From Schmidtea nova (taxonomy: Eukaryota), in the NCBI GenBank assembly GCA_044892505.1, contig JBJFYY010000010.1:1-64000 (forward strand): DNA of 64,000 nt. The letters run 5' to 3'. The position numbers and the translations under genes are program-made. The notes beneath the pieces are model-generated. The model saw nothing but the letters and a program-made list of their open reading frames with translations. It had not been told where the DNA came from and ran no database searches. This document shows, in pieces, positions 22,705 through 23,657 of this stretch (its first letter is position 1; every line of letters begins with the position of its first letter).

Positions 22705-23543
22705 GCCTACTCATAGATTGCGTACGTGATGGTAATAACCGGGAGTAGATTAGCCACAGAAGCTAACCGGCCCTATAAAGGACAGCACCCATCACGTTTC
22801 CTCGGCCGGGCGGCACCGAGTTTTTCGTTCAAATTCAATCTACCGGCGATATCCGTACTAATTAAGCGTTCTCCAACTTAGTATATGGAGTCGATAATTA
22901 GCTTCGTACATGAACAAATCTTGGGCCGTATACTATGGGGGCGATCCAATTTCCTATAGAACACAGGAAAAAGGGGCTCATGTCATAGAAGACCGAGATC
23001 ACTATTATTTACGGGAACAAGTCGATCACGACAGGGACCTGCTCCCCTGTTTTATCCAAGGCCATTGCTGGTCCTCGTACCTATCCGGGTGCCTCTTTCA
23101 TAGCACCATCCGGTCAGTCGAGCTATTCTCGAAAAGTAATCCCGGGATCAAACAATTTGATAAATCAAACTGTATATTAGAGCGAATCTCATTCACTAAC
23201 TGGCCAGGTCAAAGTTAAAATTATTCCAGGTTTCCCCAAAATACCCTGAGACAGTTTCGCGAACAAGCAAACATTGAGTGAATTGAGTGATATCTCGCGA
23301 TATCATCAAACAATGTTAAACTACAACCAAGACGGTGAAGTCTTATCCCTCTGTAGGAAGGATCGCCAGACATTAACTCTAACATTTTGCAATGTGTCTG
23401 ATAAATTAGTTAATGAATGACTCGGGAATTAGTACAGTTCACCGAAGCAAACCGTTGCGGCTGGACCACGTGCAGGTTTCCCTATTAAAACAACTTTGAC
23501 AAAACAACAGAATTCCTACAACTCAAGCGCCCCGAAGGGTCTG
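22705..23543 (-). mobile_element. Non-autonomous R2-site element (SIDE-like, ~840 bp), full length
   Basis: Replaces the AA of TCTCTT-AA-GGTAGCC; 5' HDV-like ribozyme; structured 3' end; no RT ORF. Confidence 0.85.
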
Positions 23544-23579
23544 AAGAGAGTCATAGTTACTCCCGCCGTTAACCAGAGC
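23424..23579 (-). ncRNA. HDV-like self-cleaving ribozyme (copy 2)
   Basis: Same core as 8971-9029 (core 23424-23482). Confidence 0.8.
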
Positions 23580-23657
23580 TTAGTTGAATTTCTTCACATT
23601 GACATTCATGGCACTGGGCAGAAATCACATTGCGTCAAAGCCGTTCACCAGCCATCG

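What the first reader, a model, noticed from the sequence alone, without database searches (positions are those of the whole stretch)
22705..23580. Non-coding ~840 bp element at the R2 site with a complete HDV-like ribozyme that borrows P1 from 28S
Seen on the minus strand: GGGAA-ACC-TGCACGT-GGT-CCAGCC-GC-A-ACGGTTTGC-TTCG-GTGAACTGT-ACTAA-TTCCC gives P2, P3, P1 3' strand, P1.1, P4 and J4/2 with the catalytic C. L3 is atypical (GC instead of CC) and is matched by a GC partner. The P1 partner is not in the element. It fits upstream 28S either as GGCGGG (one G.A mismatch) or as GCTGG, a non-canonical variant in this 28S that pairs perfectly with CCAGC. There is no RT. Known: R2 ribozymes can cleave in upstream 28S, and Drosophila has non-autonomous SIDEs. 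Inference: a SIDE-like parasite in a probable flatworm, possibly coevolved with host 28S sequence.
Basis: partly seen in the sequence, partly recalled or inferred. Interest (0 to 1): 0.8.

Follow-up and report, generated by a model that had tools for sequence, protein, structure and literature searches.

The report
Non-coding ribozyme insert in planarian 28S
A roughly 837-base, gene-less retrotransposon remnant sits at the classic R2 target site of a planarian 28S rRNA gene, with a ribozyme-like head and a retrotransposon tail, which would make it the first such "SIDE"-type parasite described outside fruit flies, though nothing here shows it is active.

Summary
The window is Schmidtea mediterranea (or a very near relative) rDNA on the minus strand. 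A non-coding insert of about 837 nt (23540 to 22704) interrupts the 28S at the R2 site, in sense orientation.

- **Head of the insert.** 58 nt in lies a 59-nt HDV-like core (23482 to 23424) with P2, P3, L3, P1.1, a 9-bp P4 and a CNRA J4/2. The 5' strand of P1 is missing.
- **P1 partners.** The only partners within 278 nt are the canonical R2 "-28" stretch of 28S (one internal mismatch) and a perfect hexamer in a variable 28S hairpin.
- **Tail of the insert.** The last ~230 nt, plus a further 180-nt block, are ~70% identical to the 3' UTR behind a reverse-transcriptase gene piece on the plus strand. One 9-bp helix shows three compensatory changes. That gene piece is NeSL/LIN-type, not R2 proper.
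- **Best reading.** It is a SIDE-type non-autonomous element.
- **Caveats.** Both copies lie in near-identical, rearranged rDNA units, one of them truncated. The P1 mismatch resembles one that abolished cleavage in horseshoe crab. Mobility and cleavage are unshown.

It is a new member of a known kind, of moderate interest.

The parts
22704..23540 (-). The non-coding insert at the R2 site of 28S, full copy. It is about 837 nt. One G at either end could belong to the 28S or to the element.
   Evidence: Rfam LSU alignment shows an 839-nt insertion. The boundary is corrected against the uninserted S. mediterranea 28S. No ORF over 54 aa lies on this strand.
23561..23567 (-). 28S stretch at the canonical R2 '-28' position. 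It is the candidate 5' strand of P1, with the predicted cleavage site at its 5' edge.
   Evidence: It pairs with the P1 3' strand at 5 of 6 positions (6 of 7 with the next base), with one internal mismatch. The -28 site is the commonest R2 cleavage site, planaria included.
23483..23560 (-). J1/2 linker: 20 nt of 28S (23560-23541) plus 58 nt of element (23540-23483).
   Evidence: Coordinates. P1 to P1' spacing in R2 ribozymes ranges from 23 to over 700 nt. No significant similarity to upstream 28S.
23424..23482 (-). HDV-like ribozyme core: P2, P3, L3, P1 3' strand (23464-23459), P1.1, P4, and J4/2 with candidate catalytic C at 23432.
23648..23653 (-). Alternative, perfectly complementary P1 partner inside a variable 28S hairpin.
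   Evidence: perfect 6 of 6. One search shows it is one strand of a 28S stem. About 7% chance expectation (my calculation).
23156..23334 (-). Homology block 1, shared with the plus-strand relative (60941-61113).
   Evidence: blastn: 68.6% identity over 185 nt, E = 6e-13.
22708..22923 (-). 3' module (homology block 2): structured 3' UTR-like end, shared with 61110-61339.
   Evidence: blastn: 70.8% identity over 236 nt, E = 2e-25. Consensus fold has 4 pairs changed on both sides.
22724..22797 (-). Long-range 9-bp helix of the 3' module (22797-22789 with 22732-22724). Three of its pairs are changed on both sides in the relative (61235-61243 with 61315-61323).
8572..9087 (-). Second copy of the insert (ribozyme core at 9029-8971), identical in sequence. 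It is cut short at its 3' side and joined to an 11-mer repeat of the spacer.
59857..60789 (+). RT C-terminal/thumb gene piece of a NeSL/LIN-type retrotransposon, lying directly upstream of the homologous 3' UTR. It is a broken gene: one 5' truncation and one loss of the C-terminal zinc-knuckle/endonuclease part.
   Evidence: Relatives carry Ulp1 + RVT_1.
60790..61339 (+). 3' UTR of that relative. It ends in non-rDNA sequence.
   Evidence: No 28S flank.
23541..26097 (-). 28S rRNA gene, the part upstream of the insert (unit C).
   Evidence: Rfam RF02543.
22160..22703 (-). 28S rRNA gene, the part downstream of the insert, up to a second interruption.
   Evidence: Rfam alignment.

Best explanation
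The insert is a SIDE-type (short, internally deleted, non-autonomous) derivative of a 28S-specific non-LTR retrotransposon of the endonuclease-bearing R2 group. It sits in sense orientation at the R2 target site of a Schmidtea mediterranea 28S gene.

**Shown**
- It has no gene.
- Its head carries a complete HDV-like ribozyme core whose P1 3' strand is complementary, bar one internal position, to the 28S stretch at -28 that most R2 ribozymes use.
- Its tail is a structured 3' UTR homologous to the one behind an RT gene piece elsewhere in the window.

**Inferred mechanism**
- RNA polymerase I co-transcribes the insert with the 28S.
- The ribozyme folds with 28S bases as the P1 5' strand and cuts 28 nt upstream of the site, releasing an RNA that starts with 28S sequence.
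- The 3' UTR is bound by the protein of an autonomous relative, which copies the RNA into a nicked 28S site.
- The seamless 5' junction fits the model in which the retained 28S bases guide second-strand priming.

**These particular copies** are probably inert. P1 has a mismatch. The host rDNA units are interrupted twice or truncated. The two copies are identical and spread by duplication of the rDNA unit.

I put about 0.8 on 'retroelement derivative with a genuine ribozyme module and a genuine 3' module', and about 0.45 on 'a family that is or was mobilised in trans'.
For: - **Position and orientation:**
- **Ribozyme core:** unique in the window, with a chance expectation of 0.28 per 128 kb before position and P1 are considered.
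- **P1 3' strand:** matches the -28 site at 5 of 6 positions. That site is used by many R2 lineages, including planaria (PMC3774820). The spacing is within the known range.
- **L3:** has the U and G that the paper calls conserved.
- **No coding content:**
- **3' homology to the UTR behind an RT piece:** 70.8% over 236 nt, E = 2e-25, and 68.6% over 185 nt.
- **Compensatory changes:** three in one 9-bp helix, all 43 predicted pairs kept in both sequences, and slid controls giving 0-1.
- **The RT piece is real:** 164 relatives, E down to 9e-27, aligning to residues 573-834 of a 1135-aa Ulp1-RT-endonuclease protein.
- **Precedent:** the Drosophila willistoni SIDE has the same anatomy and similar identities, 64% and 81% at the ends with an unrelated centre (PMC3414825).
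Against: - **No independent insertions.** The two copies are 100% identical over the shared 516 nt, have the same junction, and lie in rDNA units that differ at 31 of about 10,190 positions.
- **P1 is imperfect.** A single P1 mismatch in the horseshoe-crab R2 went with no detectable cleavage in vitro.
- **No Rfam HDV-like model matches**.
- **The relative is not R2 proper.** The only relative of the 3' module lies behind a NeSL/LIN-type RT piece. That copy is itself broken and is not in a 28S site, so it cannot be the mobilising partner, and its UTR could have been joined to the RT piece secondarily.
- **No other copies found.** No autonomous element with the same ends, and no further copies, turned up anywhere I could search.
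- **Covariation rests on two sequences.** The fold was derived from those same two sequences.
Confidence: 0.65

Rival explanations
1. It is a one-off dead copy. A full-length 28S-specific element inserted once, lost its gene by an internal deletion in place, and has since been copied only passively by unequal crossing-over of rDNA units. It was never mobilised in trans.
For: - Both copies are identical, share one junction and sit in near-identical units.
- The units are clearly rearranged: there is a second interruption of the 28S, and the tandem 9772-bp units lack the 28S 3' part.
- P1 carries a mismatch.
- Passive spread of degenerate R2 by rDNA turnover is described in stick insects (abstract of PMC4370867).
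Against: - The retained parts are exactly the two modules a non-autonomous element needs.
- The 3' module shows compensatory change against its relative, which means its lineage evolved under structural constraint. That constraint could, however, have acted on an autonomous parent.
Confidence: 0.3
2. The ribozyme uses the perfect GGCTGG partner in the variable 28S hairpin, about 110 nt upstream of the site, and has co-evolved with this host-specific 28S sequence.
For: Perfect 6-bp complementarity, duplex energy -10.1 against -5.8 kcal/mol for the -28 site.
Against: - A perfect hexamer somewhere in 278 nt is expected by chance about 7% of the time (my calculation).
- The partner is one strand of a 28S stem, paired with its own complement.
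- Reported R2 cleavage sites reach only 36 nt upstream (abstract of PMC3774820).
- The near-match at exactly -28 is the expected one.
Confidence: 0.07
3. The ribozyme-like motif is a chance resemblance, or the insert is something else altogether, such as a group I intron or a piece of an R2 ORF.
For: - No Rfam HDV-like hit.
- The 59-mer's fold energy is not unusual: z = -1.3.
Against: - The joint chance of the core, its position, its orientation and its P1 match is about 1e-6 (my estimate).
- No group I intron hit at E up to 10.
- No ORF remnant.
- The tail is homologous to a retrotransposon 3' UTR.
Confidence: 0.03

Closest known systems
Drosophila R2 SIDEs (for example R2Dwi_SIDE; Eickbush & Eickbush 2012, PMC3414825)
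   Same: - Short, gene-less insert at the R2 site of 28S in sense orientation.
- HDV-like ribozyme at the 5' end.
- 3' end homologous to a retrotransposon 3' UTR, with compensatory changes.
- Comparable size (529 bp against about 837 bp) and comparable end identities.
   Different: - The host is a flatworm.
- The predicted cut is 28 nt upstream in 28S rather than at the junction.
- There is no poly(A) tail.
- Junction variation, copy number and cleavage were shown for the fly SIDEs and are unknown here.
- The only RT-bearing relative found is NeSL/LIN-type.
R2 ribozymes that cleave at -28 in 28S, including the Schmidtea R2 (Eickbush, Burke & Eickbush 2013, PMC3774820)
   Same: - The P1 5' strand is supplied by the GC-rich 28S stretch at -28.
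- Long J1/2.
- 5-bp P2 and 3-bp P3.
- L3 with the conserved U and G.
- Catalytic C in J4/2.
- Uniform, seamless 5' junction.
   Different: - One internal mismatch in P1.
- P1.1 is a G-C plus C-G pair rather than the usual composition.
- No ORF follows.
- I could not compare letters with the published planarian ribozyme, which is available as a figure only.
R2/R1 hybrid SIDEs of Drosophila (PMC3414825)
   Same: A ribozyme of one lineage is joined to the 3' end of another, which is a possible parallel to an R2-type head with a 3' UTR related to that of a NeSL/LIN-type element.
   Different: The fly hybrids sit at the site of the 3' partner (R1), with its target duplication. This insert sits at the R2 site. 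The hybrid nature here is only a possibility.
Planarian R5/LIN lineage of the NeSL clade (LIN9_SM, LIN24_SM and LIN26_SM are 28S-specific; Kojima & Jurka 2015, PMC4640811)
   Same: - Same host.
- Endonuclease-type non-LTR elements with 28S targets.
- The RT pieces in the window, including the one next to the homologous 3' UTR, have Ulp1-RT-endonuclease relatives.
   Different: - The one published 28S junction I could read is antisense and at another 28S site. It matches the second interruption at about 22160, not this insert.
- No ribozyme is described for this lineage in what I could read.
R2NS-1_SMed, the non-site-specific R2 of S. mediterranea (Kojima et al. 2016, PMC5035012)
   Same: An R2-group element of the same species found outside 28S, like the plus-strand relative here.
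   Different: It is assigned to clade R2D, whereas the plus-strand RT piece groups with Ulp1-bearing proteins. No sequence was available to compare.

Membership tests
R2-type SIDE (non-autonomous element at the R2 site) | Inserted at the R2 target site of 28S, in the orientation of rRNA transcription | tested here: met
   The junctions lie within 1 nt of the canonical site when compared with the uninserted S. mediterranea 28S.
R2-type SIDE (non-autonomous element at the R2 site) | No reverse-transcriptase gene | tested here: met
   The longest sense ORF is 54 aa. tblastn with all plus-strand ORF pieces gives nothing.
R2-type SIDE (non-autonomous element at the R2 site) | 5' end folds as an HDV-like ribozyme | tested here: met
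   All core helices and the conserved L3 and J4/2 letters are present. P1 forms with 28S at -28 but has one mismatch.
R2-type SIDE (non-autonomous element at the R2 site) | The ribozyme self-cleaves | not testable with these tools
   Sequence only. A single P1 mismatch went with no detectable cleavage in horseshoe crab.
R2-type SIDE (non-autonomous element at the R2 site) | 3' end homologous to the 3' UTR of an autonomous R2 of the same genome | tested here: inconclusive
   It is homologous (E = 2e-25) to the UTR behind an RT piece. But that piece is NeSL/LIN-type, broken, and not in 28S.
R2-type SIDE (non-autonomous element at the R2 site) | Many copies with the junction variation typical of separate insertions | tested here: not met
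   There are two identical copies with one junction in duplicated units. Only this window could be examined, so this speaks for the window and not for the genome.
HDV-like self-cleaving ribozymes | Nested double pseudoknot P1-P2-P3-P1.1-P4, with a catalytic C in J4/2 and a 3-bp P3 | tested here: met
   Descriptor match. No Rfam family model scores, because P1 is split by about 96 nt.
HDV-like self-cleaving ribozymes | Helices supported by covariation among homologues | not testable with these tools
   No homologue of the 5' module was found.
R5/LIN (NeSL-clade) 28S-specific elements of planarians | RT phylogeny within the NeSL clade | not testable with these tools
   The insert has no RT. Its 3' relative's RT piece has Ulp1-RT-endonuclease relatives.
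R5/LIN (NeSL-clade) 28S-specific elements of planarians | Insertion at the family's own 28S site and orientation | tested here: inconclusive
   The readable published junction is antisense and at another site. The R5 paper and the third LIN junction were not readable.
Group I intron in LSU rDNA | Group I core, with exon ends that rejoin to the native 28S | tested here: not met
   No Intron_gpI hit at E up to 10. The tail is homologous to a retrotransposon UTR.

The most novel reading that the evidence does not exclude
The insert may be a cross-clade construct, or evidence of convergence. It has an R2-style head: a ribozyme that takes P1 from 28S at -28, at the R2 site, in sense orientation. 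Its 3' UTR belongs to the planarian NeSL/R5-LIN lineage.

Either reading would be new:
- a hybrid SIDE has formed between two endonuclease-type clades in a flatworm; or
- a LIN-lineage family has itself taken over the R2 site and the R2 way of freeing its RNA from the rRNA transcript.
Probability: 0.2. Interest if true: 0.7.

Novelty: new member of a known kind. Interest (0 to 1): 0.45.

Why it matters
In the library I could search, R2-site SIDEs are reported only from Drosophila. A planarian example would show that internal deletion repeatedly produces the same minimal parasite, a ribozyme plus a 3' UTR, across distant animal phyla. It would also be the first with the widespread '-28' type of ribozyme, which leaves 28S bases on the RNA.

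The link between its tail and a NeSL/LIN-type element raises the question of which protein recognises it. That bears on how target choice and RNA recognition are shared among R2-group elements.

For annotation, it shows that this stretch of the planarian genome is a block of multiply interrupted, partly truncated rDNA units, not working rRNA genes.

Tried and rejected
**Searches that found nothing**
- Rfam at gathering and at E up to 10, on 2.2 kb and on 281 nt: no HDV-like, group I or R2 3' UTR family.
- Two metagenome scans, one with the catalytic-core pattern and one with a pattern conserved in both 3' UTRs: no match.
- Exact-protein look-ups for three window ORFs: not on record.
- Word search with the 270-aa ORF: nothing.
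- The R5 paper and one review are not held.

**Ideas tested and dropped**
- A degenerate 28S duplication at the element's 5' end: no significant similarity.
- My first reading, that two 28S bases were deleted at the junction: dropped once the planarian 28S sequence was seen.
- The contigs of three full-length relatives: no 28S flank and no 5' ends.

- I did not read or infer any masked N.

- Early in my private reasoning I began to recall letters of the HDV ribozyme, and later a short R2 protein motif, from memory.

Full report
**Context**

The window carries rDNA on the minus strand.
- Unit C has SSU at 29530-27729, 5.8S at 26771-26619 and LSU from 26097.
- A self-comparison shows two further units (1-8573 and 8572-18345) that are 100% identical 9772-bp tandem copies and about 99.7% identical to unit C.
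- Forty-base probes published for Schmidtea mediterranea rRNA match the window's 18S and 28S at 0-2 mismatches, including in variable regions (PMC6884822 supplement; script).

**The insert**

The Rfam LSU alignment breaks at the R2 site with 839 unaligned bases. One published probe spans the uninserted site and shows that planarian 28S has CA where the Rfam consensus has AA. The first three 'inserted' bases are therefore 28S.

The insert runs from 23540 to 22704, about 837 nt. One G could belong to either side, and no 28S bases are lost. The insert is in the sense orientation of the rRNA and has no poly(A). On this strand no ORF exceeds 54 aa. tblastn with every plus-strand ORF piece of the window finds no coding remnant.

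**The ribozyme-like head**

The core runs 23482-23424, and the candidate catalytic C is 23432.
- P2 and P4 are the minimum-free-energy fold of the 59-mer. The energy itself is unremarkable, as expected for a pseudoknot.
- A descriptor scan of both strands finds a core with P4 of at least 5 bp only here and in the duplicate at 9029-8971.
- Sequence generated with the window's dinucleotide content gives 0.28 such cores per 128 kb.
- Requiring the core to lie within 100 nt downstream of a 28S junction, in sense, multiplies this by about 1e-3. A P1 3' strand with at least 5 of 6 Watson-Crick matches to one given hexamer has probability 19/4096. The joint figure, about 1e-6, is my rough estimate.
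- Rfam's HDV-like models do not score. They expect P1 next to P2, whereas here the strands are about 96 nt apart.

**Where P1 comes from**

Within 278 nt upstream, only two stretches pair with the P1 3' strand at no more than one mismatch.

*The -28 stretch, 23567-23561.* Counted on the uninserted planarian 28S, this is exactly the '-28' position.
- Eickbush, Burke and Eickbush (PMC3774820) showed that most R2 ribozymes, including the planarian one, take their P1 5' strand from this GC-rich stretch and cut there. The RNA keeps about 28 nt of 28S, and such elements have uniform 5' junctions.
- The spacing here is inside their range of 23 to over 700 nt.
- The pairing has one internal mismatch.
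- The same paper reports that the horseshoe-crab R2, with a single P1 mismatch, gave no detectable cleavage in vitro.
- 'Borrowing P1 from 28S' is therefore the ordinary R2 arrangement, and this copy may be a poor cutter.

*The perfect hexamer, 23653-23648.* It is one strand of a stem in a variable 28S hairpin. It lies about 110 nt upstream, against a reported maximum of 36. A perfect hexamer in 278 nt is expected about 7% of the time. I find no support for co-evolution with the host 28S.

**The tail, and a relative in the same window**

A sensitive blastn of the insert against the window finds two matches on the plus strand.

| Insert (window coordinates) | Plus-strand match | Identity | Aligned length | E-value |
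|---|---|---|---|---|
| 22923-22708 | 61110-61339 | 70.8% | 236 nt | 2e-25 |
| 23334-23156 | 60941-61113 | 68.6% | 185 nt | 6e-13 |

- This plus-strand stretch is the untranslated region that follows an ORF piece at 59857-60789.
- A consensus fold of the two tails keeps all 43 predicted pairs in both sequences. One long-range 9-bp helix (22797-22789 with 22732-22724; 61235-61243 with 61315-61323) has three pairs changed on both sides. Slid controls give 0-1.
- With two sequences, and a fold derived from them, this is suggestive rather than conclusive.
- The insert is thus made of a 58-nt leader, the 59-nt core, about 90 nt of unmatched sequence, and about 630 nt of 3' UTR-like sequence. The relative lacks 232 nt of that last stretch.
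- This is the anatomy of the Drosophila SIDEs: 529 bp, ends 64% and 81% identical to R2, an unrelated centre, and compensatory changes in the 3' fold (PMC3414825).

**What the relative is**

The ORF piece has RT domain 6-7 and thumb motifs. Pfam and the word search left it open, and the best solved structure was an R2 protein at only E = 0.09. I therefore used the exhaustive search.
- It found 164 relatives, the best at E = 9e-27 and 28-35% identity.
- The piece aligns to residues 573-834 of a 1135-aa protein.
- Seventeen of 30 long relatives carry an N-terminal Ulp1 protease domain plus RVT_1. The alignment also keeps a CCHC motif downstream of the RT, and the separate RLE piece noted below matches the endonuclease region of P0001.
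- That is the architecture of the NeSL clade. In planarians this clade is the R5/LIN lineage, which has diversified targets including 28S (PMC4640811).
- Two other plus-strand pieces match the same relative: an RT N-terminal piece at 37877-38710 (E = 3e-34) and an endonuclease piece at 33927-34094 (E = 2e-15).
- The piece next to the homologous UTR is broken in two ways. It has one 5' truncation, and it has lost the C-terminal part that holds the zinc knuckle and endonuclease in full-length relatives.
- It ends in non-rDNA sequence.

It therefore cannot be the mobilising partner, and I cannot exclude that its UTR was joined to it secondarily. The parent of the insert could be R2 proper, a LIN-lineage family, or a hybrid of the two. 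This is unresolved.

**State of the copies**

- Unit C's 28S is interrupted a second time at about 22160. It resumes after an N mask at 19139.
- Units A and B lack the last third of the insert, the rest of the 28S and most of the spacer. The insert is joined directly into an 11-mer spacer repeat.
- Units B and C differ at 31 positions, none in the insert.
- The copies seen here therefore multiplied by duplication of the rDNA unit, and the units are unlikely to make working 28S rRNA.

**Verdict**

- The SIDE-like reading is the best explanation of the anatomy, but mobility and cleavage are not shown.
- The co-evolution idea is not supported.
- In the library searched, R2-site SIDEs are known only from Drosophila. 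This is a new member of a known kind, with a possible cross-clade twist.

**What I did not do**

- I filled no masked N.
- I list no places of breaks within genes.

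Noticed in passing
window 1-18345 (units of 9772 bp); junction at 8572/8573 and its equivalent: Two 100% identical tandem rDNA units consist of spacer, 18S, 5.8S, the 5' 2.5 kb of 28S and the first ~516 nt of the insert. They are then joined directly into an (ATATACTTCAT)n spacer repeat. This is a deletion derivative of the rDNA unit that has itself been amplified.
   Followed up: yes
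window 19345-22159 (+), between 28S pieces ending at ~22160 and resuming at 19139 (-): This is a second interruption of the same 28S, at Rfam model position ~2812. It holds a plus-strand ORF, antisense to the rRNA, of at least 875 aa with C-terminal C2H2 fingers. The flank and the antisense orientation match a published junction of 28S-specific LIN elements of S. mediterranea (PMC4640811, S6 Fig).
   Followed up: partly
window 37333-59795 (+): Five tandem units of 4851 bp carry asparagine-rich ORFs and, in each unit, the same N-terminal piece of a NeSL/LIN-type reverse transcriptase. Short antisense 28S fragments near the sarcin-ricin loop lie next to the periodic N masks. It looks like an amplified mosaic of element pieces and 28S scraps.
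   Followed up: partly
window 33927-34094 (+): An isolated piece of a restriction-like endonuclease domain, 51% identical to residues 995-1047 of relative P0001, runs into an N mask. No homologous 3' UTR follows it.
   Followed up: partly
window 19140-19344 and 35716-35926 (N), beside 28S pieces at 18996-19139 and 35683-35696: These masks sit where a conserved stretch of 28S would be expected (Rfam model ~2815-3011, between the break at ~22160 and the sarcin-ricin region). I did not read, infer or fill them.
   Followed up: no
window 7167-7652, 16939-17424, 31392-31877 (+): A 161-aa ORF with a clear RING finger (Pfam zf-RING_2, E = 1.3e-8) lies in the rDNA spacer of every unit, on the strand opposite to the rRNA.
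   Followed up: no
window 23541-23543 (-) and the uninserted site in PMC6884822: Planarian 28S reads CA where the Rfam consensus has AA just before the R2 nick site. This shifts the apparent insert boundary by three bases and removes an apparent target deletion.
   Followed up: yes
L002 4470-4543: A Ulp1-RT relative from a Logan assembly ends in an A/T-rich tail directly followed by a tRNA-like T-arm sequence. This suggests a tRNA-gene target, as reported for some planarian LIN families.
   Followed up: no
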